A stretch of DNA of 64,000 nt from Takakia lepidozioides. Its lineage: Eukaryota; Plantae; Bryophyta. Below are positions 4,201 to 56,000 of the stretch, piece by piece. Numbering within the stretch: the stretch's first letter is position 1; each line of letters opens with the position of its first letter. The DNA lies in NCBI GenBank assembly GCA_030704615.1, contig CM060731.1:47616001-47680000 (forward strand). The letters run 5' to 3'. The translations under genes were made by a program, and so were the position numbers. The notes beneath the pieces were generated by a model. It was given only the letters and a program-made list of their open reading frames with translations, was not told where the DNA came from and ran no database searches.

Positions 4201-7200
4201 GTGGGGTATGCGTTGTGTTTCTGGAATGGAGGATGTGGTCATCTCTCTATTGTAGGATTTAGAGAACCTCTACGTTGTACCCGTGGATTTTTCCAACCTG
4301 GATTGCTACTATTGTTGCTTCGAAATTCAGGGCATCAGGGTCTCTGTTCCAGATTAGGTTGCCTGAATGCGAGTGCTCTTAGGATTGATGTGGCCTTTCG
4401 AATTATGTTAGATCTATGAAGGAGTCTATGCTGAACATGCTCATTGCTCTCTTCCAGTATTTTAGAATATCCTGAGGAGTTGGGGTCTATCTGAATACCA
4501 AAATTGGTTTCATACTTGTTCCCACATGATTTGTTTATCGGGTTCTGTATTTTCAGATTCACTTTTTCCGGCCAGTGCCCAAGGAGTACTTACACTCAGC
4601 TGCATTACGTGACATTATGCAGTTTGGGAGTAGCAATATGGCTGTCTTTTTCAAAATGCGTGTTTCTGGTGTTTTATGTGTACTTCAGTTTGAGACAAAG
4701 CAGGTCAGACACCCGCAAGACTGCTAAGTGGTCATTATTGTCTATACATGATACCATTATTTGGTAATTCTCAGACTGACAGCAAAATTTTCAGGGCACT
4801 AAACAGATGTTGATTGCTCTAATGTGACTGCGGATTTGAGTGTTCGATCCATGGAGAGGATAGCATGCTATCAAATAATTTAAGGAAGTTTGGGGTTGGC
4901 TGTGTGTGTAGGAGGGGGAAGGATGGTAACTAAGGGAGGTTTGTGATGGTGAGCAGGGTGAAGAGATATGTGTAGCACTGCAGACGCACATCAATGAAGT
5001 GATGTCGCGGCGTTACTCCAAAACGCGTAATGCATCCTATATGCAGGGTCCAAGTGCTCCTGATGCAGTGCCAGTTTTAAATTTGAATCCGCCCGGCGTT
5101 GAAGTGTGGCAGAAGCAACTACAGGAGATGTCAAAACTCCTTGATGAATCTCAACATAAAATAGATCAGGCAAGTCGTGTAATAATTTTTTTTCTCATTT
5201 CTGAGTAGTATGACCCATAGCTTGCAGGAATTGAGAGCTGAACCGACGTGGTATTCTCTAAGGCAGCTTTCAGAAGAGATACGTGGTAAGGAGAAAAAGG
5301 AAACACAGCTAATGGAGGAGCTGGCATGGCTTCGAGATACTCTGCGTGCAGAGGAACAGGCCCGCTATGAGGTGTCTGGAGAGCGAGGGCGCCTGTCCAA
5401 GCAGCTGATTGACATGGATGCTGCATTGCAGGTACTGATTTGTTTGGTTTTGAATTCTTTTATGCTGGTCGCAGCGTGTGTTAATTGTTCTTTGCATATA
5501 AGTGGACAACTAAGTGCAGGAAGGTAGTTCTGTTCCTAGTCTCCACCTACCTGGAATTTTTCCTCTCATTTGGGATAGTTGAGAGGGGAATGGAACAGTT
5601 TGTCATAGCATCTTTCATATGCAGGCCTGTCTCCCAAAGCTGACCTGGTTGGCCTCAAAAAACAGGCAGTGCTCCACACGCAGAGCTCCACAATCCCCTC
5701 TGGAGGTCCAAAGGACAAGAATTCTGAACAGGATCGCAATCTCGAAATCCAGGTGTTTTGCCTTGGGCATTAAGTCTTTACACAGCTGTGCTCTGTTCCT
5801 GTTGCTATTGCTTTACCAATCAGAAAGATTTTGATGCTCACTCTGAATCACAGTGTCTGCATGTGGTCATCTGCAGCCTATGACTCCGCTTTTGATGTGC
5901 TGGTTGCCTTGATTCTGATTGTTGTCCTATTGTGTCACTTCCACGAGGTCATCTCATTTCTGCAGTATCTACGGCTACAAGTGGTGTCCCTTGACTGGGT
6001 CTAATGAGCTTGTAAGAAAAGTCGGTGGTAGAGTTTGTGATTCTTGCGAATGTATGTCTTGTTTGTTGACAAACTAATGGTGGTGCTGTGATTGCTTGAT
6101 AGCTCAAGGAATCACAGAATGAATTGAGGGTAATGACAGAGGAGCTGCAAAAGAAGGAGGAGATTGCCAATAATTTGGCAACAGAGAAACATGAACTGGA
6201 GCAGAAGTTCACCCATCTTGAGAGAAGCAAAACAGAGGAGGTATGTGTAAATTCCCTTTGGAGCATTGTAAGAAGTTATTGTTGATGTTTGTTGTCTCTC
6301 CCATATCCCCTACCTGTGCTTCACCTCCAGTTGCTTTGCACCCATGCAATAGTTCTCTGTCTCCACCACAGAATCTGCAAGTGATTGAGGTGGGCAATGT
6401 TGGAGGTGTCAAGGCTATAGCCCTTGCACGGCACTCTGAGAACAGAACGGGACGGGTAGCTCAGTGGTAGAGCACCCCACCGGAATGGGGGAGGTCCTAG
6501 GTTCAATCCCTAGCCCGACCACACGCCAGTGGTTTTCCAACATGGTATCAGAGCCAAGGTTGGGGCGGTGGTCAGAATGGGTGGGCATTAGCATAAGGGC
6601 TTCGCCTTGAGGGGGAGTGTTGGAGGTGTCAAGGCTATAGCCCTTGCACGGCACTCTGAGAACAGAAAGGGGACGGGTAGCTCAGTGGTAGAGCACCCCA
6701 CCGGAATGGGGGAGGTCCTAGGTTCAATCCCTAGCCCGACCATACGCTAGTGGTTTTCCAACATGGTATCAGAGCCAAGGTTGGGGCGGTGGTCAGAATG
6801 GGGGGGCATTAGCATAAGGGCTATGCCTCGAGGGGGAGTGTTGCAGGTGTCAAGGCTATAGCCCTTGCACGGCACTCTGAGAACAGAACGGGACAGGTAG
6901 CTCAGTGGTAGAGCACCCCACCGGAATGGGGGAGGTCCTAGGTTCAATCCCTAGCCCGACCACACGCCAGTGGTTTTCCAACAGGCAAGTCATTTATATT
7001 GGCAATGTAAATGCACCTGTATGAAGAGTTCAACAAATAGAAGTTGTGCTGAAGCTGTGACTGGTGTGGAAGCATTTGTACTGTTTATCAGTGGAGCTGG
7101 GCAATATGAGCATGGTGATTAATACATGACTGACGTCCATTATACGCATGAGTCCAATGTGCCAAAAGGTCTAAGATGCCTTCATATTATCTCTTCAACA

Positions 7201-10200
7201 GTCCGATTCATTTGTTTTCCTTGGGGAAGGTGGGGGTGGGGAGGAGGGGCTGGGCAGATCTCAATGTAATGCAATTAAGTGGAAACCCGTGGTGTTTCAC
7301 TTCATCAGTATTGTGGGGGAGTTCTTTAAGTTCCCTTCTTTCTGGATTTGGAGAGGGAGCATAGCACCTGTATCATTGCAGGGCTACCTAGGGAACTTGT
7401 ATAAGTTGGGGCTCATTTTGACAAGTCTCTGTTGTGGTGTAGACAAGAGTGCTTGAGCAGAACTTTGAGAATGAGAGAGACGAGCTAAGGGTTCAACTAG
7501 CAGATAGCGAGAAGAAATTGGCAGAGCTCACTCAACAGCTGCATTGTGCTGAATCAATGCTGGCTGATCACAGCCGTGAGTTTCAAAAGTTGCAGGCCAA
7601 CGTTAAGGAGCACGACGAACTACAAGAGATGAAGGAGGTGAGAAGAAGGAAAGGGAGAAAGATATGTATATATCCTTGTCTACAATTGTTCAGTGCTTCA
7701 GCTCCTTAGATGTGGTAGAGAGGCATGCTTCCCTGCTTGCATGCAGGAAATTTCAGCAACCAATCAGTATTAATCTGTATCATGGATCCTTCTGTCAACA
7801 TTGCTAGGAAGCTCTGTCTCTGTTATAAAGTACCATTCCATTCATTTCATTCTGTGTATGCAACGCAATTGTTAGAACTAAGAGCCACGGGTGCTCGTGC
7901 ATGGATGATGTAAAGGACGTAGACAGGAAGAATGCTCAAACTGCGGTCATTTTGAAGCGTCAGGCCGACCAAATACTTCAGCTAGAGGCCCACCACAGGG
8001 AGGAACAGATCCTGCGGAAGCGTTACTTCAATATGATTGAAGGCATGCCTCCTCCTTCCTTTATCCCAGTCTGTTTCTTGCCCTGTCCGTGACTCTGATG
8101 GGTATAACTATTGTGTCCCTCTGTTGTCTCCAATTTGCTCAGCCTTCTTTATATATTGACTGGATGTCAATGATGGAATGTGCCCACACTTATCACTTTC
8201 TGTTGTTCTTCATTTGGGAGTCTGCAGATATGAAGGGTAAGATAAGGGTGTATGTGCGATGGAGACCATTGAATGAAAGAGAGAGGGAGAACCAACGGAA
8301 TGTGCTATCATCCCCTGATGAATTTACAGTTGAGCACCCGTGGAAAGATGACAAACCTAAGCAACACCAGTTTGACCGTGTGTTTGATCAATTTTCTACC
8401 CAGGAACAAGTCTTTGAAGACACTAAGGTAGGCTCTTTGAGATATTTAGGCTGCTGACATCCACTACAGCATTTGGTTTGGGGGGAAATCCTGTACATGT
8501 GAGTAACTATCACGGCTGATGATGGGTTGCAGTATTTGGTCCAGTCGGCAATTGATGGGTTCAATGTTTGCATATTTGCATATGGGCAAACCGGATCGGG
8601 CAAAACCTTCACAATCTATGGGACAGACAGTGATCCGGGGCTCACACCCCGGGCTATTCGGGAGCTTTTCAACTGCATGAAGCGGGATTCCAACAAATAT
8701 TCATTTGCTTTGAAGGTAAGGCACTATTACAGGTCTGTGCTGTTATTGCCAGTTGATAGGTTTCTTCTTGGGTCCGTTGTCCTTGCTGTATATCTGGACT
8801 GAACTCTCCTTTGACTGCATCAGGAAGTCCAGTGCAGCCAAAAATGAACAGACAGATTATAGTGTAATGAGCAATACACTTGTGTTCTCTGTAATTTCTG
8901 ATATTTTGGTGAAAGAGACCTGAAGAACTTCAGATCATTTTTTACGTCATAAAGTACCACTTCATTTCATTTCCTCAAGAAAACAATATTCAAATATGGT
9001 CTGACAGATAGGCTAGTGCTGAGTTGATATGGCGCCTAATTCTGCTGGGACGTATTTTTGGTCGAGTTGCAGGTGTACATGTTGGAACTCTACCAAGACT
9101 CTCTGATTGACTTGCTTCTGCAGAGGAATGATGGGAAACCACGCAAACTTGAGATCAAGAAGGACACTAAGGTAGGTGCTCTTTCCTTGGCAAGTACCAG
9201 AAAAGTTGCCTTTGCTGCCTCTGCGCTACAGTTTGGTGTCATTATGTGCAGTGCCTTGGGGAATGGTGTTCTTGCGCCTTTTTGTCGTCTGGCTGAAAAG
9301 GAGAAATGAAATGAAATGAAATGGTGAGAGGGGTTGAATTGCTTGAGCTGTTTGGGCAAAGGGCAGGTGCCTAGGGATTAATGGCTGTGTATCTGTTGAA
9401 GTCCTTAGTTGGTGTCAGATGGCAGCAAAAGTTCGGACTTGTATGTATTTTTTCAACGTTATTGATATTCAGAACTCTCCTCTGCATTTTATGACTACTC
9501 AGTGATCGGATATAGTTCTCTTAAAGAGATCTGAGGGGATTCTACTGTATCTCTTAGTGCTGGTGACATACTGGGTTCTGTGCCTGATTTGTAGGTAGAT
9601 TTTCAAATGGGGCAGAGATCAAAACAGGTGAAAGGGCTTAAAGTTCTCTTGCATCTTACTGCAATTCGGACATGGCAGGGCATGGTGGTGGTGGAGAATG
9701 CGACTGTGCTGCCGGTCGCATCACTGGAAGAGCTGGAAGCCATTTTATTCAAGGGCCTGGAGAAGCGGCATACCTGTGGCACTCAAATGAATGAAGAGAG
9801 TTCACGGTCACACCTCATATTGTCAATTATTGTTGAGAGCACCAACCTGCAGGATCAAGTCCTTGTGAAGGGCAAGGTCTGTTTCCACAGATGTCTGGTC
9901 TGTTTTGGTTGTTTAAAAGAACAACCTGCTGTTTCTGAAATTTTCCTATGATTGAAGGTGGAGATGGACGGAGGTGTGAGGACAATAGAGAGAGAATGAT
10001 GTACGCTGATATCATCAGGCAGTGTGAAGCTTGTGCTGGTAAGGGCCAGCATTGGCAAACGCTTGAGAGTAAACACGTGATTCCGACACTTCTCCACCAT
10101 GAGTCTAGACAGAACATCCAGAAAGCTCCCTAAGATGATGAATGATGGCCTACCAATGGACCCTTGAGCCACGCAGGCCTCAGAGAAGGTTATAGATATA

Positions 10201-28164: not shown

Positions 28165-29898
28165 ATGTCATGCAGGATGTCAGGGTTTGAGCGGCCACAG
28201 TTGTTAGAATCAGGTACTTCCACTATGACCACGGCTTTTGAAAGAGGATCAAGAGAGGGAGTCAACAAACACTTTTCTGGCATTTGTGGGGATGTGAGGA
28301 TGCTCTGTAAGGCAGGACAACTGAAAGCGGCAATGCAGATGTTGAACCAACAAGGCACTTGGGCAGACTCCGACACTTATGCCTGTCTCTTGCAGAAGTG
28401 TGGCATAATGGAAGACCTAGAGACAGGAAAGCAGGTGCACGCCTACATTATCAAAAGTGGGTTTAAGCCAAGCACCTTTCTACTCAATTTTCTTGTCAAC
28501 ATGTATGCCAAGTGCGGGAGTTTGGTGAATGCGCGCCATGTGTTTGACAAAATGCCTAGACGAACTTTGGTTACCTGGACTGTCATGATGGGAGGATATG
28601 CCAAGCATGGGTATGGTAGGGAGGCTCTCCAGATATATGAGCAGATGATAAGGGAAGGGGTGACACCCAACAGGGTCACCTTCATTTGCATTCTAAAGGC
28701 GTGTGCCAGCCTGGCAGCCCTGGAAATAGGCAAAGGGGTCCATGCTGATATCATCAAAGCTAGAATTGTGCCAGATATTATCATGGAGACTGCCCTTGTT
28801 GACATGTATGCCAAATGCGGTAGCATAAAGGATGCACGTGAAGTATTCAACAGTATGGCGCAACGAAATGTGGTCTCATGGAGTGCGATGATTGCAGGAT
28901 ATACCCAGCAAGGATTTGTGAGGGAGGCTTTCAAGATCTATGAGCAAATGATACAAGAAGGGGTGACACCCAACACGATCACATTCATTTGTGTTCTCAA
29001 GGCATGTGCCAGCCTGGCAGCTCTGAAGAAGGGCAGAGAGGTCCATGCACACATCTTTAAAGTTGGCGTTGTGCCAGATATCATTTTGGGGACTGCCCTT
29101 ACTGACATGTATGCCAAATGTGGGAGTGTAAAAGATGCACGTCAAGTGTTCAACAATATGGCTCAACGAAACATGGTCTCGTGGAATGCGATGATGGCAG
29201 GCTATGCTCAGCATGGGTATGGTAGGGAGGCTTTGGATATCTATGAACAAATGAAAAAGGAAGGGGTGACACCTGACAAGGTCACCTTCATATGTGTTCT
29301 CAATGCATGTGCCAGCCTGGCAGCCCTAGAAAAGGGCTGTGAAGTCCATGCTGACATTGTCAAAGCTGGAATTGCACAGGATGCCATTTTGGAGAATGCC
29401 CTTGCTAACATGTATGCCAGATGCGGTAGCATGAAGGATGCCTGCCGAGTTTTCGACAATATGGCTGAACAATATGTGGACTCGTGGAATGTGATGATTG
29501 CTGCCTATGCTCATCATGGGTGTGGTAGGGAGGCTCTCAAAGTATTTGAACAAATGCAACAGGGAGGCTTTAAGCCAGACAGTATCTCGTTTATAAGTCT
29601 TCTTTCTGCATGCAGCCATGTGGGACTAGTGGATGAATGCCGTCACTACTTTGATTCGATGAGTCGAGATCATGGCATCACTCCAACACTGGAGCATTTT
29701 GGCTGCATGGTGGACCTTCTTGGCCGTGCAGGGCAATTGGACGAAGCACAGGACTTCATTAACATAATGCCAATTGAACCACATGCTGGGATTTGGGGGG
29801 CTTTGCTTGGTGCCTGCAGAATTCATGGCAATGTGGAGCTAGCAGAACAAGCAACGAAATCCCTTCTCAAATGGGAAGCAGAGCATGCTTCAAGTTAG
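28165..29898 (+). CDS. PLS-class pentatricopeptide repeat protein (RNA-editing-factor type), truncated in the E domain
   Basis: 577-aa single-exon ORF with repeated P-L-S triplets (VSWNAMxAGYAQHG / VTFICxLxACASLAAL / ALVDMYAKCGS). It ends LLSACSHVGLVDE, HFGCMVDLLGRAG, IWGALLGACRIHGN. Confidence 0.92.
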   Translation: MSCRMSGFERPQLLESGTSTMTTAFERGSREGVNKHFSGICGDVRMLCKAGQLKAAMQMLNQQGTWADSDTYACLLQKCGIMEDLETGKQVHAYIIKSGFKPSTFLLNFLVNMYAKCGSLVNARHVFDKMPRRTLVTWTVMMGGYAKHGYGREALQIYEQMIREGVTPNRVTFICILKACASLAALEIGKGVHADIIKARIVPDIIMETALVDMYAKCGSIKDAREVFNSMAQRNVVSWSAMIAGYTQQGFVREAFKIYEQMIQEGVTPNTITFICVLKACASLAALKKGREVHAHIFKVGVVPDIILGTALTDMYAKCGSVKDARQVFNNMAQRNMVSWNAMMAGYAQHGYGREALDIYEQMKKEGVTPDKVTFICVLNACASLAALEKGCEVHADIVKAGIAQDAILENALANMYARCGSMKDACRVFDNMAEQYVDSWNVMIAAYAHHGCGREALKVFEQMQQGGFKPDSISFISLLSACSHVGLVDECRHYFDSMSRDHGITPTLEHFGCMVDLLGRAGQLDEAQDFINIMPIEPHAGIWGALLGACRIHGNVELAEQATKSLLKWEAEHASS

Positions 29899-30330
29899 GT
29901 TCTGTTATCGAACATTACGCTGCTTCTGGCAGATGGGAAACTCCAGCAAAGATCGATGGAGGTATCAGAAAGGAGCCACGGTGAGTTGGATCGATGTGGA
30001 CAACTGGGTGTATTTGCTGTAGAAGACAAATTGCATCCTGTGAGGAGGCTGAAGAGATTGTCTCGACGGACGAAGGAAGCACAGTATGTGCCTGACACAG
30101 GCTTTGTATTGCATGATGTGGAGGAAGTGCAAAACATTTCCCTTTGCCATTCGTTTTGGGTTCATAAGCACCCCCTTGGAATGCCTGTCCGTGTCATCTT
30201 GAATCTTCGAGTGTGCGGTGACTGCCACGCTGCCACCGAGTTCATCTCAGTGAGAAAGTTTGGTACGGGGATGCTAACCGTTTTCACCGCTGCCAAGATC
30301 GGATTTCTTTCGTGAGGAGTACTTGTCAAT
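29899..30330 (+). pseudogene. Decayed E/E+/DYW-domain coding region of the PPR gene
   Basis: After the TAG come VLLSNI, a frameshift to YAASGRW, then FAVEDKLHP, YVPDTGFVLHDVEE..LCHS, NLRVCGDCHAAT.FIS and RDANRFH in changing frames. The HSE(K/R)LA motif is missing. Confidence 0.88.
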
Positions 30331-44031: not shown

Positions 44032-47000
44032 TCATGTTGAAGCATGCAAAGCCTTGTTGAGGGGCAGCCCAGCCACAGCACTTCCCTCAATTCCGCACTC
44101 ATTGGTGCCTCGCACAATCCGGAACAAACCATTCTGTGACAATCAAACAAACTCTCAGTTTAAGGTTTCCAAGGAAGGACATGATAGATATGTACACATA
44201 ACAACCAAAGGGACATCCTCAATGAGGCAGCAGACTTGGCAAAGGTACTAACTGGTGCATGGCTGCAAGTGTAGAATAATGGTCTAGTTAACAAGTCAGC
44301 AGATCAGCCGTGCTGACATGTGGAGTAGCAATAACTTTCTTTAAATAGTACAAGAACTGCTGTGAATAACCCAACAAGAGAGACAAGACACATTTGATAT
44401 TCTCCTGGCACTGTCTGCAGTATGCTTATGGCCAACATGCTGAACCTCTTTTGGAAGACAGAGAGAAAGAAGTTAAGTCCAGAGCCCAAAGGCATCAAGG
44501 TACAGAATGTACTCATAAGACGTTGTTTGCCGTAGCCTTGTGGCCATTGACCCCGCGCGAAGTTTGAGCGGAACACAAAGGGACAGAAACTACCTTTGTC
44601 AGGGGCTGACGCCAGTAGTATGACTTACCTTGGAACAGACAATTGATCCAAGTTTTCCAGATATCCTCTAGAAATCCCATAACACAAGCATCAATCTGCT
44701 GTGTGTGGTTTGCCCAATAACTAGGCCCCAAAAGGGCCTGGGCTTTTGGCTCAGCCTGGAGACTTTCAAAGTTGGTAAACAGAGGTACAGGCACAATTCC
44801 CTTGATGGATTTGAAGAGGGCGTCTCTCTGGTGAAAGTACCCAGGACAATGAATCAGAAAATGAATATTGTCTTCAGGTTGCCCACACAACGGGCATTTG
44901 CAATCCCCCTTTCCTCTCTGCTTCTGTTTGCTGTTCAAAGGTAGGCTTCCCACCCTGTGTTTAAATTTCAGTCTAGTGCCGAGAGTGGGTAAATCCTTGA
45001 GGTCATCCATGATGGCCTCCCCATGTCGTAGACTGGAAACAAGTTCAGGGAAGTTTTCTGCCCAACTTCATTTTCATCAGACAATTTCCTGGCAACAGAC
45101 ATGGCTCTGCACACTACAGCCTCCAAGTCAGATTTATCCAGCAGGGTCAAGTTGCGGACTTAGATTCAGATCCTCGAGAATCTCTGCTACCCTCTTCCGC
45201 CAGGACTTAGCCTGTTTGACAGGGCAATCCTGCTTCCAAGATATAGAGTCGATTAACGTAGGATATCTGATATTAGTCATACATTGCAGCTGACCCCACC
45301 ATCTGACCTTGAATTCATCTCGACGGGAGCTTAAGGGAGGGATGCCAAACTCACCCGAACAGCCACATTGGCTGTTTTGGAGCATGCTGACATGCACTCC
45401 TTAAGCACCCCCACTTGAATGGATTCTAAAGACTTAGCCTGGTTGGAGTTATCAACCCATACTGCCGATGCGTACTCCAAGGCAGGCCTAATAACACGGC
45501 AAAGCATGGCTTTTTTTACTTCAGAGTTGATCCCTGTCCGGTGGAAAAATTTAGTGAGACCCAACACCCAACGCTTTGCGTTTGCCAGATTGAACAACTT
45601 TTTTGAATATCTGCACCCCAAATACAGTTGGAGGAAAACTCAAAGCCAAGATATGTGTAGGAAGGGAGAGCCGGAATCTCTTGGCTTCCCCACTGCCACT
45701 TGAGATCGCCTCCCCCTCGGTCGTTGATTGCCACCACTGTGCATTTACTGACGTTAGCCTCTAGGCCCCAAAGGTCAGAGTATCTCTTCCCGCGGTCAAT
45801 CAACTCCTGAAGATTGGATGGAGTCTCCCCTATGCCTGCGAAGTCATCCGCAAACATAAGGGCTGGTATGGTGGCATCACCCACCCTTAACCCAAATCCC
45901 TCACTTTCCACATCCTCGAGGAGTTGATTGATGAGAGTTTTGAAGAGCAGAGGGGAGAGGGTACATCCTTGAGTTACACCTTGGTCTATGTCAAAGAAGT
46001 TATAATTGGGAAGTCTATGAAGTCAAAGAAGTCTATGCTAATTGTAATTGGGATGCACATATCCAGAAAGTTGTTCAAACTGGCAAGGGCAAAGCTCTGG
46101 GGCTCACTAAATTTTTCCACTGCAGAGGGGTCAACTCTGAGGTTAAGAAAACCATGCTTTGTCGGCCTTGAGTACGGATCTGCTATATGGGTTGATAACT
46201 CCAACCAGGCTAAGTCTCTAGAATCCATTCAAGTGGGGGTGCTTAAGGAGTGTATGTCAGCATGCTCCAAAACAGCCAATGTGGCTGTTTGGGGTGAGTT
46301 TGGCATTCCGTCCTTAAGCTCCTGACGAGATGAATTCAAGGTCAGATGGTGGGGTCAGCTGCAACATATGCCCAACACCAGATATCCTAAATTAATCGAC
46401 TCTATATCTTGGAAACAGGACCGCCCTGTCAAACAGGCTAAGTCCTGGCAGAAGAGAGTAGAAGAGATCCTCAAGGACCTGGACCTGGATCCGCAAGTCT
46501 TGACCCTGCTGGATAAATCTGACTTAGAGGCTGTAGTGTCCTCAGCCATGTCTGTTGCCATGAGATTGTCTGATGAAAATGAAGTTAGGCAGAAAACTTC
46601 CCTGAACTTGTTTCCAGTCTGTGACATGGGGGAGGACATCTTGGATGACCTCAAGGGTCTACCCACTCTCGGCACTAGACTGAAATTTAAACTCAGGGCA
46701 GGAAGCCTACCGTTGAACAGCAAACAGAAGCAGAGAGGAAAGGGAGAGTGCAATTGCCCGTTGTGTGGGCAATCTGAAGACAGTATTCATTTTCTGATAC
46801 ACTGTCCGGGGTTCTCTCACCAAAGAGACGCTCTCTTCAAATCTATTAAGGGAATTGTGCCTGTACCCCTGTTTACCAACTTTAAAGTCTCGAGGCTGAG
46901 CCAAAAGCCCAGGCCCTCCTGAGGCCTAGTTTTTGGGCAAATCACACACAGCAGATTGATGCTTGTGTGAAGGGATTTCTAGAGGATATCTGGAAAACCC

Positions 47001-50000
47001 GGATTAATTCTTTATATGGAGGTAAGTCTTACTACCAACGTCAGCCCCTGACAGAGGTAGGTTCTGTCCCTTTGTTCCCGCTCAAACTGGGCGCGGGTTC
47101 AATGGCCACAAGGCTATGGCAAACAACGTCTTATGAGTACAATATGTCAAAGAAGTTAGACTTCTGTCCGTTAACGGTGACACAGCTTTTGGTGTGAGCA
47201 TACAAGTTATGGACCACTCTCCACATCTTTCCCTTGATCCCAGATGACCAGAGTCGGAGCCAGAGACCATCTCTCCACACTGTGTCATAAGCCTTTTTGA
47301 CATCCAAGAAAAAGACAAAAGTGGGTTTCCCTTCTTTTTTCCTTCCCTGGATAATCTGGCTTAGAGTGAAGATATGATCTACACAGCCCCTGTTTCTCTG
47401 AAAGCCAGCTTGGCCTTCGTGGAAACAACCTCTAGACTCCAGATCAACCTCGAGACGAGTACTTATAAGTCTGCAAAATATGAATCTCTTGTCATTACCA
47501 CCATGGTGGTTTGAGTTTATTTCACTGTGTAACTTGTCCCAGTATGATTTCTTCTGAGACCGTACAAGCTGATTGATATCTTTGCGGATCTGGTAGTACC
47601 TAGCCCACAATTCTTTGTTGACGTTCAAATTGCAGCACACTTTATAGAATACTCGTCTCTCCGCTATCTTGAGTTTGATCTCATTTGTCCACCAATTAAC
47701 AGCTCTGCCACAGACAAGTAGTTTCGTCCCAATGATCTTGTCAGCCACAGAGGAAACTCTCCCAAGAATCCACCGCTCTTTCGACTTCATATCTTGCATT
47801 GCCAGAGCAAGACTGAAGATCTTGGAGCGAATGGACAAAGTGAGGGAGAGCCTCTTGCAAGGCCTGGACATACTTCCGTGACCTCTTCATTTTGGAATTT
47901 TTCTATGCGCCACTTCCGAATCGAACGTTTCACAGATCTCTTGGTGTTTGGGAAACACCTTTTGATCTCAGTCCAAACCAGGAAGTGGTCAGAGGTACCC
48001 AGTTCTGTCGATCAACACATTGGCACTCTAGGGAAACAAATACTTGTCCACTATGATATAATCCGCAATGGATCGATCCCCAGCCTGGGCTTTCTCACGT
48101 GTCCACTGCACCTATTATTCAAGGTCAAAAGCTGAAGTTCTTCGAGACAGTTTATTAACCGTCTTCCATTAGAATTCAGCTCGTCCTCACCAAAAGGCCC
48201 AATAGTATCATCCTGATGAAGACCTTTACTCACTTGGGTCAAGGTCACCCAGAAAGACCACCTGACCTTTGGGGAGGAACTTAGCACAGTCTAGCTTTAT
48301 GTCTGCGAAGGCTTTGTCTGTGTCAGCACTAAGGGTCCCCTCTGTGGGCATGTAAACACAGCCCACAAATACTCACGCCGCCCTTCAATTTCAGTTTCAG
48401 CCAGATACTGTGCTCATACCCCAACCCTTGTTGATAATTTCACAATTGTCACACAAGAAATCACGGATGAAGAAGCCAACACCTTTTTGACCACGCTGGG
48501 CAGAGGCCGTCTTAAGTGCACACATTTTACCAAACCATCTATAGCCATTGACATCTCCAACCAGTTTGTCCGAAGTTTCACTGCACAGATATGAATACCA
48601 TTTGCATGAAGAACTTGTCCCACTTCAAATTGTTTCCTTTGGTTAGTCAGCTCCGAGAAGTTAAAAGTGCCCAGCCGCAAGCCAGCCCTTTGCATATTGA
48701 TTGTTTGCTATCTAGGTCAGCCTATGATTGCTCCTGGACGGCCAACCGATCTGCAAAGGGGGATCAATTACCCTGTGTGGAGATTTTGCTCGTTTTGTGT
48801 AAACTTTAAGGATTGGCAAACCATTCAGAGTACCGTATCCTTCAGTGACACAACGCTCAGACTCGGCACACATAGGGCCAGCTAGTCTGTCTGGCTGCTT
48901 GGTATCAACCTCATCCAGGGCATCAAACCGGTTAGAAACTTTCAAGTTGAGGTCCCACCCTTGGTTGTCTTCCTAGAGCGCCTCATTGCATCACCAATGT
49001 CTAAGACCACTCTCCAGCCAGTCAAGGGACGAACTTCTTTGAAATTGAGTTGATGTGAGACTCTATTTGTAGCATTTTAGACATTGAAACCTTCCAAGTA
49101 CCTCTGTTATCAAGTCTCGAGATGGTGCCATTAGCCACAGAATCCAAGCCTAAGCTGGAGCAGGTAGTTTTAAAGGACACATCGTCCATCCTGGGATTCA
49201 CCCCAAAAACTACACAAGAAGCCCTAGATGTGGCACAAGTAACCATTTCCCAGGAATCACCCTGGGGAGTGTTGTTATCGTCATGGCAAATTAAATTGAT
49301 AGATCTCGCAGGCTATAAGTTTAAGCACAAGGACCAACCCTAGCCCAAGTGCCGAGCATGCTTGACAGAGCATACAACTGCCCATTTTGGGCGGAGGGGC
49401 TGCCCCCAAGCGGTAGGGGTACGCTTGTTACCATTCATAGATCACACTCCAAAGGAGCTACAGGGAATGGCCCGCGTAGACATATTCTAAAGAGGGAGAG
49501 GCCCCAAACTCTCCAACTAAATCCAATGCACTACCTTACCCGAAGCAGAGTGCTTCAGCTCAAAGACCAAGGTACAGAGACAGACAAAGAGCAAAAGAAG
49601 GAAGCAAGAAGATAATTTTCATCTGCGGGAGGTCCAACTGGAGAGAGAGAGAGGGGTGGGGGAGGGGGCCAGTCCAGAGTGCAGAAGAACCTACCTCACC
49701 CCACGACCGATTCCATGAATTCACAATCAGCTGCACAGATATTACAGCTCAACTCAGATATTGCACAACATTGCTTTCACCTTAACATCACACTTGCAAA
49801 GAGCTTATGGGTTGCAAGTAATTAAATTCACAGATCATGGGCACACTCAGAACACCTCATCTAAAATCGCACGCACCCAATAATCAATGCCTTCAGAAGT
49901 GGTACCCCAGCCAATGAGCTTCACAGCATGGCCTCCCATATAGTTGCCTTCCAAATGCTTGTACACACCTGTCTTGTAATGAGCGAAGTCCTGCCAGTTC

Positions 50001-53000
50001 AAAGGCATGATGAAAAGCAATTCAACATGTTGGACACCGAAAAGCACTGCAACTGTCCATTTTTGATGGGCTGTTGCAATTAGTTTCCAGGAACATCATT
50101 TTTTTTTACCACCAGACTAGAACTGCAGTAGTCTGCAGTAACAGAGGCACCCACTGTACCTGTAATGCATTTGGGGATGTCACTCCAAAATCAGCCAAAA
50201 GTGTATACTTTCCAGGAACGGTGATCTTCAGTACAAAAAGATGTTTAGCTTTCCATGGCACACTTTTGGGAAGCATGCATAATGTACATAGTCCAGAATT
50301 TCCCACTCCTGCATGGCTATATTACACAGCATTCAATTCAGTGCATTGCCAAGGGCTGGCCATCACCCCACTAATATCGTGGCTTCTGAACAATGAAGGC
50401 AGGCTTCTTCGTACATTACGAGACCTCTAGCCAATGCCATTCCTCTTCTAGTGAGGCCTAACTTTCAGAAGCACAGTAACGACATTTTTCGTTTCACCCT
50501 CCAGTTGTTGCAAACCCAAGACTCAACTGCACATGAGCCATCACAGACATGGAGAGCATCTTTCACTAGGGATACCTCTCTCTCTCTCTTGTTCATGCAC
50601 CACCACTGCCTGCTGTGGGAGGGTTAAGTATCCAGGAGACTTTTGCCCATTTCTGTCTCGATCTCTCTGAGGCATATATATTGTTTCTTTAGAGACTCCC
50701 AGTCTCTGGCACAGGACTCAGGCACAGGCTCAGGCTTTGAGTCTGCATGGCAACCCAGGTGCACGGCACTTCATCTATGAATGTCCTTCAATATTTTTAG
50801 TGGCTTGGTTCCATGGACCCTTGGCACCCCCTGTTGACATTATGAAGCTCTCTCTCTCTATGACCACAAGGCTATGTCTTATAAGTACAGTCTCTCCCTC
50901 CATGATTGTGGCTAAGTTCTTTGTAACAACACTCAAGAATTGCCTGATCCCTCTGGCTCGCTTTTGTCTACTTCCTGGATGTCAAAAAGGCTCATGACGT
51001 AAGCGTGACGGGCTGTGGCTCTGGGCTTTGGTCTTCTGGGGTCAGGGGAAAGATGTGGAGGATGGTCCACAACCTGTATGCGAACACCAAAAGCTGTGTT
51101 ACCGTCAATGGACAGAAGTCTAACATCTTTGACATTGAACAAGGTGTAGCAGGTTGTACCCTCTCCCCATTGCTCTTCAATGTTTTTATAAATCAGCTTC
51201 TTGAAGATAAGCTGGGTGGGTGGTTTGGGCTAAAGGTGGGTGATGCCACTATACCAGCTCTTATGTTTGTGGATGACTTCGCAGGCCTAGGGGATACCCC
51301 ATCCACTCCAGGAGCTCATTGATTATGTGAAGAGGTTCTTTGACCTGTGCCCACACATATCTTGGTGTTGAGTTTTCCTCCCACTGTAACTGGGATGCGC
51401 ATAAACAAAAAGTGATTCAATCACCTAAACGTAAAGCTTTGGGTCTCAATAAATTTTTCCACTGCAGAGGGATTAATGCTGAAGTTAAAAGGACCATGCT
51501 TGGCAATGTTATTAGGCCGGCCTTGGACTACACATCTGCTGTGTGGGTCGACAGTGCCAATCATGCTAAATCTCTAAAATCCATTCAGGTCGTGGTGCTC
51601 AAAGAAAGCATGTTGGCTTGTTCTAGAACAACTAATGTGCTGTTCGGGCGAGTTTGGCATACCTCCCTTAAGCTCTCTATGGGATGACTTCAAGGTTCAG
51701 ATGGTGGGGTCAGTTGAATCGCATGCCGATCACCAGATATGCTAAGATAATCAGCGCTATTTCTTGGAAGCAAGACCGTCCTGTTAAACAGGCTAATTCT
51801 TGGCGGAAAAGGGTAGGAAAGATTTTCAAGTATCTCAGTATTAGTCCAGAAGAATTGACCCTACTGGATGAAGCTGACCTGGAGGGGGTTGTGTCCAGAG
51901 CCGTGTCTGATGCACAAAGACTGTCTGATGAAAATGAAGTGGGTGAGGACCTCAAGGATGATCTGAAGGGTCTACCTACCCTTGGCACGAGAGTGAAATT
52001 TAAACTCAGGGCGGGAGGCCTATTTTTGAAGAATAAACAGATGCAGAGAGGAAAAGGAGATTGTAATGCCAATGTGTGGGCAACCTGAAGAAAATATCCA
52101 TTTTCTGATACATTGTCTGGGGTATTCTCACCAGAGAGTGACCCTCTTCAGCAACATCACCAACATGGTTCCTGCACCTCTCTTCACCCACTTTCAAAAT
52201 CTGGAGGCTGATGTATCCTTGGCAGGCTATCCTTGGTATCCTTGGTATCCTTGGGAGGTATCCTTGGTTCCTGCACCTCTCTTCACCCACTTCCAAAATC
52301 TGGTGACTGATGTATCCTTGGCAGGCTATCCTTGGTATCCTTGGTATCCTTGGAGGCTACAGTATCCTTGGCAGAGCTTTTAGGTCTAACAGTGAGGGGT
52401 CTTTTGAAGAATAGAAGGACACAGTTGAAAAAACTGTTCCTATGATTCAAGAGAGCCCTGATGAACTGGAGTATATTTCAAAGGGTTACAATGCTCCCAT
52501 TAGTTCTTCTGAGATTATGGAAGCAATTGAGCATTTAAACGGATATAAAGCTGGTGGACTTGATGGCACAGTCAATGAGCTTATCAAGCATGGTGGCGAC
52601 CCCATGATAGAGGCCCTTGTACTTCTCTTTAACCTTATATGGAGTAATGAAATTATCCCCTTTCACTGGCGACAGGGAGGTCATTGTCAATCTACACAAG
52701 AAAGGTGACAGAGAAGAGCCGGGGAACTATCAATGCAGTTGGCAAGATATTTTGCAGACTTATAAGTACTCGTCTCGAGGTTGATCTGGAGTCTAGAGGT
52801 TGTTTCCACGAAGGCCAAGCTGGCTTCCAGAGAAACAGGGGCTGTGTGGATCATATCTTCACTCTAAGCCAGGTTATCCAGGGAAGGAAAAAAGAAGGGA
52901 AACCCATTTTTGTCTTTTTCTTGGATGTCAAAAAGGCTTATGACACAGTGTGGAGAGATGGTCTCTGGTTCCGACTCTGGTCATCTGGGATCAAGGGAAA

Positions 53001-56000
53001 GATGTGGAGAGTGGTCCATAACTTGTATGCTCACACCAAAAGCTGTGTCACCGTTAACGGACAGAAGTCTAACTTCTTTGACATAGACCAAGGTGTAGCT
53101 CAAGGATGTACCCTCTCCCCTCTGCTCTCCTAAACTCTCATCAATCAACTCCTTGAGGATGTGGAAAGTGAGGGATTTGGGTTAAGGGTGGGTGATGCCA
53201 CCATACCAGCCCTTATGTTTGCGGATGACTTCGCAGGCATAGGGGAGACTCCATCCAATCTTCAGGAGTTGATTGACCGCGTGAAGAGATACTCTGACCT
53301 TTGGGGCCTAGAGGCTAACGTCAGTAAATGCACAGTGGTGGCAATCAACGACCGAGGGGAGGGAGGAGGCGATCTCAAGTAGCAGTGGGAGAGCCAAGAG
53401 ATTCCGGTCCTCAATTCCTACACATACCTTGGCATTGAGTTTTCCTCCAACTGTATTTGGGATGCACATGTTCAAAAATTTCAATCTGGCAAACGCAAAG
53501 CGTTGGGTGTTGGGTCTTACTAAATTTTTCCACTGCACAGGGATCAACTCTGAAGTAAAAAAAACCATGCTTTGCCGTGTTAATCGTCTTGCTCAGTTTC
53601 TTCTTCGACCGAAACGGGGAAAAAAGGCTATTAGGCCTGCCTTGGAGTACGCATCGGCAGTATGGGTTGATAACTCCAACCACGCTAAGTCTCTAGAAGG
53701 GTGCTTAAGGAGTGCATGTCAGCATGCTCCAAAACAGCCAATGTGGCTGTTCGGGTGAGTTTGGCATCCCTCCCTTAAGCTCCCGTCGAGATGAATTCAA
53801 GGTCAGATGGTGGGGTCAGCTGCAATGTATGCCTAATATCAGATATCCTACGTTAATCGACTCTATATCTTGGAAGCAGGATCGCCCTGTCAAACAGCCT
53901 AAGTCCTGGCGGAAGAGGGTAGCAGAGATTCTCGAGGATCTGAATCTAAGTCCGCAACTTGACCCTGCTGAATAAATCTGACTTGGAGGCTGTAGTGTCC
54001 AAAGCCATGTCTGTTGCCAGGAAATTGTCTGATGAAAATGAAGTTGGGCAGAAAACTTCCCTGAACTTGTTTCCAGTCTGCGATATGGGGGAGGCCATCA
54101 TGGATGACCTCAAGGATTTACCCACTCTCGGCACTAGACTGAAATTTAAACACAGGGCGGGAAGCCTACCTTTGAACATGTTCCCTCTTGTTCCGCCCAA
54201 ACTGGGTGGGGGTCTATGGCCACATGGATATGGCAAACATTCCCTCTCTCCCTCTCCCAATCCAGGCCACATAGCGGTGGGCAAGCATCTCACCTCATAC
54301 ACATCGAAGGCAACTTCAACGGGGCCATTCGTGTAAAGCTCTGCCATCAGGTCCTTGCGGTCAGATGAAATTTCATAAACACTGGTTCCTTGATGCTTCG
54401 AATCCAACCAAAACTCATCATTCACACATGCCTTCACACACTTAGGGGTATCATAGGTAGGAGAGCAGCCCGGATGTGCACAACCTATTTGATCGAAGTA
54501 CGGGTCGCACTGCCATCCGCCAAACACCAAGTCAGAGTGCATACACCACTCATCATCATGAGGAATACATGTTCATGTATCTCTCAATCTCTTTTATGTA
54601 AATGAAAGATCCCATCACATTTTTGGAGAAATTCACAACAGGGATCACAAATGGTCCAGCACAGACAGCATAGATCAGAGGCTTCTCGAAGAAATCACCA
54701 GCTAAATGTACTCAACAAGCTCAAATGCTTCAATTCATGCTGCTATCAAGAAGATTGGAACACATATATACACTACACAAAATCTCCCTGTGAAGTAGCT
54801 AGAGACCAGAGGGTGGATTAGTGAAGACAGACTCTGAATTGATCCAGTGAAATCTAAAATGTTGCAATTCAAAAGCAACAAAAGGACACATCACTTAGGG
54901 AGAATAGACGGCACACAGAAAGCACCTTGTCAGTAACAACTCCACTATGCTTGAAGTACTGCCAAGCTCTGTACGGGTAACCGCCCTCGCAGCCGTAGCC
55001 ACACTCAAAGCCACAGCACGCCAGTAGATCATTCACTGACAGCACCACACTCTAGATACAGGAAATTGATAAGACATTAGAAAACATAGTAAACTCGTAG
55101 GTAACTCCATGCAAATGTTGCTAGCATTTCTAAATGACAATGTGGCTGACTTTTCTCCATTACAATCAGCAGCACCCTGGCAAAATCAGTGATTTACGTT
55201 GATCTGTAGAAACAAGCGAAAATCGAACCCTAAACACAGCATGAGTGGTAAGGCCAGTCAACTAAAAAACCTACTTCATTGACGTGGATGCAGAACCGGT
55301 CTGTGAGCGACTCCACAGCTCCAAATGCCCAGCACGAACCACAGTGTCCCTGTCCATTTACCATGTACATACCTCAGTAGAAACTCTTCAACGTAATTCA
55401 CACAGGTGTTTGGCCGTCCCTCCCTGCTCACCTACCAGTCAATATCTCTCTCCCTGCTTCCCAATGTGACGTGAAAGAAAAAACAGACATCAAAGACTGC
55501 AGAGGGAAGAAGTCTGTGGACTTGAACCAGTACATACCTGGTCTATTTGTTTGATGGAACATCGGATAGACAGAGTATACAGGATCCCAGAAACACAATG
55601 CCACAGATGGAGGTAGTATTAGATATGTCCACGCAGACTACCTCCAGTGGAGATGCTTCTACTTGTAGCTTTGAATCAAATCCCTCAACAATTGCTGTGA
55701 AGCACTACCTGAGAGGATTTGGGTCATCATATGAGATGTGAGCATTCAGAATAGGTAAAACAACAGCTGGGAAACTAGGTGACACATCCGGAAAGCAATA
55801 GACACAGATTTTTCCCTGTGAGAGGACAGGGGGAGAGCACCTAGAATGTCATCAATGGTGGGACAGTGAGGCCAGGCTTCCCGTGCATCAAAAGTCTTGG
55901 GCAGCTTCAGAGTCATATGGTCAAAACCAACCCTCATTATAGACGAGTCCAACTCGTTGGCTGGTGCAATTATTGTGCCACACATCTGCTTGAATTGCTT

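What the first reader, a model, noticed from the sequence alone, without database searches (positions are those of the whole stretch)
6393..6988. tRNA-carrying miniature LTR retrotransposon (Pol III-driven TRIM) in a kinesin intron
Seen: three 145/146-bp LTRs with TG..CA inverted ends, an iMet PBS, a PPT, 75-bp non-coding interiors and one 5-bp TSD (GGCAA). Half of each LTR is a 72-nt tRNA cloverleaf with intact D and T arms, A/B boxes, a TATA about 33 nt upstream and TTTT just downstream. Known: Cassandra TRIMs carry 5S rRNA in their LTRs, and TRIMs with tRNA-like LTRs have been described as Helenus. Inference: this is a SINE/LTR hybrid parasite that uses a captured tRNA gene as an internal Pol III promoter and borrows RT and integrase from an iMet-primed autonomous LTR element. 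I do not recognise this family, so it may be new for this lineage.
Basis: partly seen in the sequence, partly recalled or inferred. Interest (0 to 1): 0.92.

Follow-up and report, generated by a model that had tools for sequence, protein, structure and literature searches.

The report
tRNA-carrying miniature LTR retrotransposon (Helenus type)
This is a real, tiny non-coding jumping gene whose end repeats each contain a tRNA look-alike. It belongs to the "Helenus" type described in 2024 and adds a new plant host (probably the moss Takakia), not a new kind of element.

Summary
Window 6398-6983 reads LTR-internal-LTR-internal-LTR (145/146-bp LTRs, 75-bp internals). The ends are TGTTGG...CCAACA, and a single 5-bp duplication (GGCAA) flanks the whole array. 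It has an iMet primer-binding site and a GAGGGGGAG polypurine tract. Each LTR holds a 72-nt tRNA-like cloverleaf (Rfam tRNA, 52-57 bits). The A and B boxes are intact, but the anticodon loop is non-canonical, so it is not a working tRNA.

The element sits in a 1202-nt intron of a MyTH4-kinesin gene. An RNA contig shows that this intron is spliced out normally.

Contigs of the source organism show many dispersed copies that break into different flanks at the same LTR ends.

The kind is known: Helenus/TRIMp3 (Kojima 2024). By eye, this copy is homologous to the only published plant member, Helenus-1_SMo of Selaginella, in the tRNA module, ends, PBS, internal region and PPT.

The LTR end plus PBS also match Ty1/copia elements, which points to a Copia helper.

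Pol III transcription remains inferred. RNA contigs cover the element but cannot show a start or the polymerase.

The scan had already found this family elsewhere in the same genome (s1-458702). Verdict: a new member and new host lineage of a known kind, of moderate interest.

The parts
6393..6397 (+). Left copy of the 5-bp target-site duplication, GGCAA
   Evidence: identical 5-mer directly outside both outer LTR ends
6398..6542 (+). LTR1 (145 nt), TGTTGG...CCAACA. Predicted layout: U3 6398-6449, R 6450 to about 6536, U5 6537-6542
   Evidence: In one search, contigs of other copies break into unlike flanks at 6398 and at about 6543. The U3/R/U5 split is inferred.
6406..6429 (+). Imperfect palindrome in U3 that contains the TATA (6416-6419)
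   Evidence: I4-I6; function not tested; not seen in Helenus-1_SMo
6450..6521 (+). tRNA-like module of LTR1 (A box 6457-6467, B box 6500-6509, non-canonical anticodon loop)
   Evidence: (56.6 bits, gathering score 29)
6533..6536 (+). TTTT, a possible leaky Pol III terminator. It is also part of the terminal motif TTTTCCAACA shared with Copia LTRs
   Evidence: It is the only run of four or more T on this strand in the 220/221-nt unit (read).
6543..6617 (+). Internal domain 1 (75 nt, non-coding): PBS TGGTATCAGAGCC 6543-6555, PPT GAGGGGGAG 6609-6617
6618..6763 (+). LTR2 (146 nt), the shared middle LTR of the tandem
6671..6742 (+). tRNA-like module of LTR2
   Evidence: 56.6 bits
6764..6838 (+). 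Internal domain 2 (75 nt): PBS 6764-6776, PPT 6830-6838. At 6823-6824 it carries the state seen in the other laid copies, which is the alternative state listed for 6602-6603 of internal 1
   Evidence: table 3 (6602/6603)
6839..6983 (+). LTR3 (145 nt)
   Evidence: loose ends at 6983/6984
6891..6962 (+). tRNA-like module of LTR3
   Evidence: 52.3 bits
6984..6988 (+). Right copy of the target-site duplication, GGCAA
6241..7442 (+). Host intron (1202 nt) of a MyTH4-kinesin gene that holds the insertion; spliced out normally
   Evidence: the RNA contig on 6101-6240 continues into neighbouring exons; searches place those continuations at 7443 and 5721-5750; for the Pfam domains of the exons

Best explanation
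**What it is.** This is a Helenus-type TRIM (TRIMp3), a 365-bp non-coding LTR retrotransposon. It is present here as a three-LTR tandem and was inserted once into a kinesin intron.

**How it moves.** It cannot move by itself. A Ty1/copia-like element supplies Gag, reverse transcriptase and integrase. The 3' end of initiator tRNA-Met primes minus-strand synthesis at the PBS. The PPT primes the plus strand. Integrase recognises the TGTTGG...CCAACA ends and makes a 5-bp duplication.

**How it is probably transcribed (inferred).** The tRNA-derived half of each LTR supplies an internal Pol III promoter (A and B boxes).
- Transcription would start at the tRNA +1 position (6450).
- Most transcripts would stop at the TTTT 84 nt downstream, giving a short tRNA-like RNA.
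- Read-through to the TTTT of the next LTR would give a genomic RNA of about 308 nt, with an R of about 87 nt at both ends, a 6-nt U5 and a 52-nt U3.

**Origin of the tandem.** It arose either by LTR-LTR unequal exchange after insertion or by template switching during reverse transcription, as proposed for Cassandra arrays.

**Shown:** the anatomy, the dispersed copies, the intronic position and the homology to Helenus-1_SMo.
**Inferred:** the Copia helper, Pol III transcription, and the R/U5/U3 limits.
For: **Anatomy.** LTRs, TSD, PBS and PPT are all present. The tRNA-like module scores 52-57 bits against a gathering score of 29. The A and B boxes are perfect, and the anticodon loop is non-canonical.

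**Mobility.** In the DNA run of the source organism, single-copy flanks have depth about 60. The element's bins sum to 5,000-95,000 from 515 contigs. Loose ends of unlike sequence start exactly at 6398, about 6543, about 6764 and 6983/6984.

**Same kind as Helenus.** The definition and the only plant member are in PMC10886601.
- The Helenus-1_SMo consensus shares the 21-nt GGTAGCTCAGTGGTAGAGCAC exactly.
- Its 26-nt variable-loop and T-arm piece matches with 3 mismatches, against 0 expected by chance.
- Its LTR-end/PBS junction matches with 1 mismatch.
- By eye it also shares the TGTT start, the GGTTGG after the PBS, a GTGGT..ATGG.TGGGCA block in the internal domain, and the GGGGGAG polypurine tract.
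- Four stem pairs differ on both sides yet stay paired (5-67, 28-40, 29-39, 50-62).

**Copia helper.** 38 metagenome contigs carry TTTTCCAACA|TGGTATCRGAGC. None has a tRNA. Those with open frames encode copia-type gag, pre-integrase and integrase directly after gag. The 5-bp TSD fits.

**RNA.** In an RNA run of the same organism, contigs cover U3-R, the tRNA-like part, and a piece that runs from R through TTTT, PBS, internal and PPT into U3. Their depths are 100-240. The host exon has depth 15 and the flanking intron has 0.

**Tandems.** Such arrays are known for Cassandra, and for one Helenus family in Kojima 2024.
Against: - No experiment or read-level data shows a Pol III start, a 5' triphosphate or a 3' oligo-U end. 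Contigs cannot show ends.
- The 72-nt RNA contig ends at the limits of the tRNA-like module. Sites where the LTR copies differ lie just outside both ends (6667-6669 and 6745), and assembly graphs branch at such sites. This is my reading of why the contig stops there.
- With hundreds of genomic copies, a trace of DNA or of unspliced host transcripts could give the RNA depths seen.
- TTTT is only four T and is shared with Pol II-driven Copia LTR ends.
- The TATA is not conserved in the Selaginella relative.
- No autonomous partner from this genome was examined. The window holds none.
- The cloverleaf's folding energy is no better than that of shuffled sequence (z = -0.48).
- The comparison with Helenus-1_SMo was made by eye plus short motif searches, not with an alignment tool.
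Confidence: 0.88

Rival explanations
1. It is a Helenus-like TRIM in structure, but the tRNA module is a passenger: the fossil of a SINE or tRNA insertion into an ancestral LTR. The RNA that gets reverse-transcribed would come from Pol II, either from a U3 promoter or by read-through from host genes.
For: The TTTT and the LTR end are shared with Pol II-type Copia LTRs. The RNA contigs include U3 and span the TTTT, as host-gene read-through would. This copy lies in a transcribed intron. Kojima 2024 himself says Pol III use by Helenus is unproven.
Against: The A and B boxes are identical between this element and the Selaginella relative, while the anticodon arm has diverged. Four compensatory pairs keep the cloverleaf (by eye). 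In two other organisms the listed common variants of the tRNA-like part fall in or beside the anticodon loop (6482, 6486, 6487), and none falls in the A or B box (table 3). A passenger would be expected to decay evenly. The 52-nt U3 is very short for a Pol II promoter.
Confidence: 0.25
2. The resemblance to Helenus-1_SMo is convergent. Two unrelated TRIMs, each dependent on similar iMet-primed Copia elements, would have independently captured the same conserved plant tRNA.
For: tRNA sequences are highly conserved across plants. The ends, PBS and PPT could be copied from similar Copia helpers. The U3 parts of the two LTRs are not alignable by eye. Kojima 2024 argues that Helenus arose several times.
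Against: Several shared features would not come from a normal tRNA. Both lack the U before the anticodon. Both have a mismatched loop-closing pair. Both share CACCGG in the loop, and both have the same short trailer running into TTTTCCAACA. The internal domains share blocks beyond the PBS (GGTTGG; GTGGT..ATGG.TGGGCA; CTT.AGGGGGAG) (by eye).
Confidence: 0.15
3. It is not a mobile element but a local tandem repeat of tRNA pseudogenes, or a tRNA-derived SINE array.
For: The three units lie head to tail with a 220/221-bp period. ARAGORN and Rfam call them tRNAs.
Against: The repeat has LTR logic: TG..CA ends, a PBS directly after and a PPT directly before each LTR, and one 5-bp duplication around the array. 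Hundreds of contigs of other copies break at the same ends into different flanks. It has no poly(A) or LINE-type tail.
Confidence: 0.02

Closest known systems
Helenus-1_SMo, the Helenus TRIM of Selaginella moellendorffii (Kojima 2024, PMC10886601, supplementary DataS1)
   Same: Same architecture: a short LTR with a tRNA-like module in its 3' half, an iMet-type PBS, a G-rich short internal domain, a ...GGGGGAG polypurine tract and a 5-bp TSD. Both have the TGTT... start and the ...TTTTCCAACA end. The D arm and A box are identical. The T arm and B box are near-identical.
   Different: The LTR is 145/146 nt here against 120 nt, and the internal domain is 75 nt against 85 nt. The U3 part is not alignable by eye. 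The tRNA-like 72 nt is about 76% identical without gaps, and about 88% outside the anticodon arm (counted by eye). The PBS here matches iMet better (TGGTATCAGAGCC against TGGTATCGGAGCT). The host is probably a moss rather than a lycophyte.
Cassandra (5S-rRNA-carrying TRIM of vascular plants; Kalendar 2008, 2020)
   Same: The PBS TGGTATCAGAGC is identical. Both have a small-RNA gene with an internal Pol III promoter inside each LTR, no coding capacity, and tandem LTR-internal arrays.
   Different: Cassandra carries 5S sequence with boxes A and C. Here Rfam finds tRNA and no 5S. Cassandra is 565-860 bp, against 365 bp here. Pol III transcription has been shown for Cassandra and has not been shown here.
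tRNA-derived SINEs (SINE2)
   Same: Both have a tRNA-derived head with A and B boxes as a presumed Pol III promoter, and both are short, non-coding and high-copy.
   Different: SINEs have no LTRs, PBS or PPT. They end in a LINE-derived or A-rich tail and are moved by LINE target-primed reverse transcription. None of that is present here.
Ty1/copia LTR retrotransposons with TGTT.G...TTTTCCAACA ends and an iMet PBS (metagenome loci L001-L038)
   Same: The LTR 3' end, the PBS and the following AAGGT are shared. One of them shows a TGTTAG LTR start and a GGGAG polypurine tract (L027).
   Different: They are AT-rich, several kb long and protein-coding. They have no tRNA-like module. They come from other, unidentified organisms.

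Membership tests
TRIM (terminal-repeat retrotransposon in miniature) | Short direct LTRs with TG...CA inverted ends | tested here: met
   145/146-nt LTRs, 96-99% alike, TGTTGG...CCAACA
TRIM (terminal-repeat retrotransposon in miniature) | PBS complementary to a tRNA 3' end directly after the 5' LTR, and a PPT directly before the 3' LTR | tested here: met
   TGGTATCAGAGCC at 6543 and 6764. This is the same PBS given for Cassandra. GAGGGGGAG lies at 6609-6617 and 6830-6838.
TRIM (terminal-repeat retrotransposon in miniature) | Under 1 kb and without coding capacity | tested here: met
   One unit (LTR-internal-LTR) is 365/366 bp and the internal domain is 75 nt
TRIM (terminal-repeat retrotransposon in miniature) | Target-site duplication and dispersed copies | tested here: met
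   GGCAA on both sides. 515 contigs of the source organism were laid, with unlike flanks starting at the LTR ends. TSDs of the other copies could not be read.
Helenus / TRIMp3 (Kojima 2024) | tRNA-derived sequence inside the LTR with conserved A and B boxes | tested here: met
   RF00005 at 52-57 bits. TAGCTCAGTGG and GGTTCAATCC fit the TRGCY..YGG and GGTTC motifs quoted in the paper.
Helenus / TRIMp3 (Kojima 2024) | The tRNA-like part is unlikely to be a functional tRNA | tested here: met
   ARAGORN reads no anticodon. The loop has 6 nt in the minimum-energy fold, or lacks U33 in the Rfam alignment.
Helenus / TRIMp3 (Kojima 2024) | Sequence homology to the published plant family Helenus-1_SMo | tested here: met
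   Short motifs from the published consensus match only inside the element, with 0 expected by chance. The rest was compared by eye.
Helenus / TRIMp3 (Kojima 2024) | Transcription from the internal Pol III promoter | tested here: inconclusive
   RNA-run contigs cover the element at depths of 100-240. Contigs show neither start, end nor polymerase, and trace DNA or host read-through cannot be excluded.
Cassandra | 5S rRNA-derived sequence (boxes A and C) in the LTR | tested here: not met
   Rfam scan of 6200-7200 at E up to 1 finds tRNA only and no 5S
tRNA-derived SINE | No LTRs; a LINE-type or A-rich 3' tail | tested here: not met
   LTR, PBS and PPT organisation with no A-rich tail
Functional nuclear tRNA gene | Canonical 7-nt anticodon loop with U33, and a readable anticodon that fits the body | tested here: not met

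The most novel reading that the evidence does not exclude
The plant Helenus lineage would be ancient. A moss (probably Takakia) and a lycophyte (Selaginella) would carry descendants of one tRNA-bearing TRIM that predates the split of bryophytes and vascular plants. That would make it at least as old as Cassandra. Alternatively, it crossed between these lineages. Compensatory changes have kept the whole cloverleaf, not only the promoter boxes. This suggests the tRNA shape itself is needed, for example for processing, stability or packaging. Related copies in two further organisms hint at a wide, unsurveyed distribution in non-seed plants.
Probability: 0.3. Interest if true: 0.6.

Novelty: new member of a known kind. 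Interest (0 to 1): 0.4.

Why it matters
Helenus elements were described only in 2024, and a single plant family (in Selaginella) was known. A homologous, high-copy family in a probable early-diverging moss extends the host range to bryophytes. It also gives a second plant sequence, which lets conserved and free positions be told apart: the A and B boxes and the cloverleaf stems are kept, and the anticodon loop is free.

It matters for annotation too. Such copies inflate tRNA gene counts, because Rfam and ARAGORN call each LTR a tRNA. They also sit inside genes.

If Pol III transcription is shown, this would be the second validated TRIMp3 lineage after Cassandra. It would also offer a compact system for studying how a Pol III transcript enters a Copia particle.

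Tried and rejected
- **Pattern scans for the tRNA module plus LTR end.** These found nothing in metagenome contigs, viral contigs or prokaryote genome contigs. No further Helenus copies could be fetched as DNA.
- **The 38 metagenome contigs with the LTR-end/PBS junction.** They are ordinary Copia elements, not Helenus.
- **Host identification by protein.** The PPR open frame at 28165-29895 is not on record. Its best named relatives are only 52-55% identical (Diphasiastrum, Ginkgo) and do not settle the lineage.
- **Cassandra 2008 paper.** It is not held. The 2020 paper was used instead.
- **Tool alignment and pair counting against Helenus-1_SMo.** Left out because that consensus exists only as text in a supplement and has no reference here. 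Short motif searches and a by-eye comparison were used instead.
- **Empty site.** No contig in the DNA run joins 6397 to 6989 (table 5), so no empty allele was seen.
- **Rejected readings.** A functional tRNA gene cluster, a SINE and a Cassandra member were considered and rejected (see the membership rows).
- **Folding energy.** The cloverleaf's energy is not better than that of shuffles, so it was not used as evidence.
Full report
**1. Observation**

- Three direct repeats lie at 6398-6542, 6618-6763 and 6839-6983 (145, 146 and 145 nt). They are 96-99% alike.
- They are separated by two 75-nt spacers (6543-6617 and 6764-6838) that differ at four positions.
- Each repeat begins TGTTGG (TGTTGC in the third) and ends CCAACA.
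- GGCAA lies directly outside both ends of the whole array, at 6393-6397 and 6984-6988.
- Each spacer starts with TGGTATCAGAGCC. This is found nowhere else in the 64 kb, where 0.1 matches are expected. Each spacer ends with GAGGGGGAG.
- Rfam's tRNA model scores 56.6, 56.6 and 52.3 bits (gathering score 29) at 6450-6521, 6671-6742 and 6891-6962.
- ARAGORN finds the same three but cannot read an anticodon. The minimum-energy fold is a cloverleaf with a 6-nt anticodon loop.
- The A box (TAGCTCAGTGG, 6457-6467) and B box (GGTTCAATCC, 6500-6509) are perfect.
- A TATA lies at -34 to -31, inside a small palindrome.
- The only run of four or more T on this strand in the 220/221-nt unit lies 11 nt after the tRNA-like end.

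**2. Context**

Exons around the element encode a MyTH4 domain and a C-terminal kinesin motor.

In a run guessed to be RNA, an 821-nt contig covers 6101-6240. It continues on both sides into sequence that lies at 5721-5750 and 7443-7472 of the window. So that run does hold spliced RNA, the intron is 6241-7442, and the insertion is removed with it. Without the element the intron would be 611 nt.

**3. Mobility**

I laid contigs of the best DNA holder, which is probably the source sample. Single-copy flanks have depth about 60. The element's bins sum to 5,000-95,000 from 515 contigs. Contigs run off into unlike sequence at 6398, about 6543, about 6764 and 6983/6984.

The tool warns that summed depth is not a copy number. 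I read it only as hundreds of copies or more, with LTRs several-fold commoner than internal domains. That ratio is what solo LTRs and arrays would give.

The breakpoints confirm the LTR limits independently of this locus. No contig shows the empty site.

First-reader notes list at least seven other 360-375-bp tRNA-LTR TRIMs in this genome. One array has already been followed up with the same verdict (s1-458702). Those notes are leads only. One search is my own test.

**4. What it is**

Kojima 2024 (PMC10886601) defined Helenus as TRIMs whose LTRs carry a tRNA-like sequence. He grouped Helenus with Cassandra and Ajax as TRIMp3. The only plant family reported is Helenus-1_SMo of Selaginella moellendorffii, with a 120-nt LTR, an 85-nt internal domain and a 5-bp TSD.

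Its consensus is printed in the paper's supplement. I used short motifs and a by-eye comparison instead.
- The 21-nt D-arm/A-box piece is identical.
- The 26-nt variable-loop/T-arm piece matches with 3 mismatches, only inside the three LTRs, with 0 expected by chance.
- The LTR-end/PBS junction matches with 1 mismatch.

By eye, the two also share the TGTT start, the trailer running into TTTTCCAACA, GGTTGG after the PBS, a GTGGT..ATGG.TGGGCA block in the internal domain, and the CTT.AGGGGGAG end.

The 72-nt modules are about 76% identical without gaps, and about 88% outside the anticodon arm.
- Four stem pairs differ on both sides and still pair: 5-67 G-C/A-T, 28-40 C-G/T-A, 29-39 C-G/G-T, and 50-62 A-T/G-C.
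- One pair changes on one side compatibly (49-63).
- Both lack the U before the anticodon, and both have a mismatched loop-closing pair.

These shared oddities, together with the internal-domain similarity, make common descent more likely than two independent captures of one tRNA. I keep independent capture as a rival at 0.15.

**5. Helper element**

A scan of JGI metagenome contigs for TTTTCCAACA|TGGTATCRGAGC returned 38 contigs.
- None has a tRNA.
- They are AT-rich elements several kb long whose LTRs end ...(G)ATTTTCCAACA, followed by TGGTATCAGAGCTAAGGT.
- Where frames are open, they encode copia-type gag, a pre-integrase domain and an integrase core directly after gag. That is the Ty1/copia gene order.
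- One has a 3' LTR starting TGTTAG after ...GGGAG.

So the LTR 3' end and the PBS are the standard equipment of a group of plant Copia elements. One of those loci also shows the matching LTR start and polypurine tract.

Together with the 5-bp TSD, this points to a Copia helper. Kojima inferred the same for fungal Helenus.

The TTTT is part of that shared terminal motif, so its presence does not by itself indicate a Pol III terminator.

No such Copia from this genome was available to me. The window has none.

**6. Transcription**

The Pol III model is coherent. It gives a start at 6450 and an R of about 87 nt ending in the T run, with a 6-nt U5 and a 52-nt U3. Read-through of the first T4 would give a genomic RNA of about 308 nt. 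No other T run on this strand interrupts the unit.

Support is indirect.
- The A and B boxes are identical in the moss and the lycophyte, while the anticodon arm differs.
- In two other organisms the listed common variants of the tRNA-like part fall at 6482, 6486 and 6487, in or beside the anticodon loop. None falls in the boxes (table 3).
- In the RNA run, contigs cover U3-R (6406-6479, depth 148), the tRNA-like part (6671-6742, depth 238), and a piece running from R through TTTT, PBS, internal and PPT into U3 (6492-6625 plus 19 nt, depth 102). The host exon has depth 15.5 and the flanking intron has 0.
- The last of these contigs carries the state at 6602-6603 that is listed as the alternative in all four laid runs. 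It therefore comes from other copies, not this locus.

Caveats:
- Contigs show no ends.
- The 72-nt contig stops at the limits of the tRNA-like module. Sites where the LTR copies differ lie just outside both ends, and I take that, not an RNA end, to be the reason.
- With hundreds of copies, about 0.3x of contaminating DNA, or summed unspliced host transcripts, could give these depths.

I therefore put Pol III use at roughly 0.55 and the structural classification at about 0.9.

**7. The tandem**

One TSD surrounds three LTRs and two internals, so there was a single integration. The array arose either before integration, by template switching in reverse transcription, or afterwards, by unequal LTR-LTR exchange. 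Both routes have been proposed for Cassandra arrays. Kojima notes tandem arrays for one Helenus family, LTR-11_DR.

LTR1 and LTR3 differ at 2 positions. LTR2 differs from each by 3-5 substitutions plus an indel. The two internals differ at 4 of 75 positions. These numbers are too small to choose a route.

**8. Host**

The scan's index counts 5084 windows of 64 kb, about 325 Mb, on 224 pieces. Other notes lie 34.3 Mb before and 40.1 Mb after this window on the same piece. A published table gives Takakia lepidozioides 325 Mb with an N50 of 83 Mb (PMC13120521).

The PPR open frame shows a non-seed land plant whose proteins are absent from the database. Other agents' notes also say "probably Takakia", but those are not independent evidence.

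I treat Takakia as probable, not proven.

Two other coded organisms hold abundant relatives. In these, the tRNA-like part continues into ...ACACCAAGTGTAAAAACTTTTCACA, and there is weaker cover of the internal domain. So the group is not confined to one species.

**9. Novelty**

The kind is known. The held literature has no Helenus or TRIMp3 report from bryophytes.

This is a new family and probably a new host lineage. The scan had already seen the family on other DNA of the same genome.

The more interesting possibility is that plant Helenus is an old lineage shared by mosses and lycophytes, with a selected cloverleaf. That stays open, at about 0.3.

Noticed in passing
window 6385-6397: The 13 nt left of LTR1 (TTGAGGTGGGCAA) resemble the end of the internal domain (TTGAGGGGGAG). 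BLAST therefore extended the LTR2 match 13 nt into the flank. This is probably chance, given the clean GGCAA duplication, but it could hint at a target preference.
   Followed up: no
window 28165-30315: An intronless PPR open frame of 577 aa is followed by a degenerate DYW-type end (...CGDCH...) in another frame at 29956-30315. It is either a frame-broken PPR-DYW pseudogene or a gene with an unusual join. The exact product is not on record.
   Followed up: partly
window 44500-54600: A cluster of non-LTR retrotransposon fragments lies on both strands (RVT_1 at 47131-47871, with repeated zinc-knuckle-like C-terminal pieces). One open frame (53946-54542, minus strand) joins a cathepsin-B-like exon to a retroelement-derived piece.
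   Followed up: no
L001-L038 (JGI metagenome contigs): These are AT-rich plant Ty1/copia elements from host-associated metagenomes. They share the LTR end TTTTCCAACA, the iMet PBS and the following AAGGT with the TRIM. L018 and L022 hold an open gag-protease-integrase frame.
   Followed up: partly
window 6450-6524 as laid in runs X9 and X12: Two other coded organisms carry very abundant relatives of the tRNA-like module. These have a different trailer (ACACCAAGTGTAAAAACTTTTCACA), and their common variants fall in or beside the anticodon loop (6482, 6486, 6487). This may be a sister Helenus family or the source SINE.
   Followed up: partly
window 6171: The spliced RNA contig of the kinesin exon reads G where the genome has T (table 3). 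This is probably a strain difference. It cannot be called editing without DNA from the same individual.
   Followed up: no
window 6543-6617: The internal domain is strongly G-rich on the sense strand, with several GGG/GGGG runs. The internal domain of Helenus-1_SMo is G-rich too. A possible role in RNA structure or packaging was not examined.
   Followed up: no
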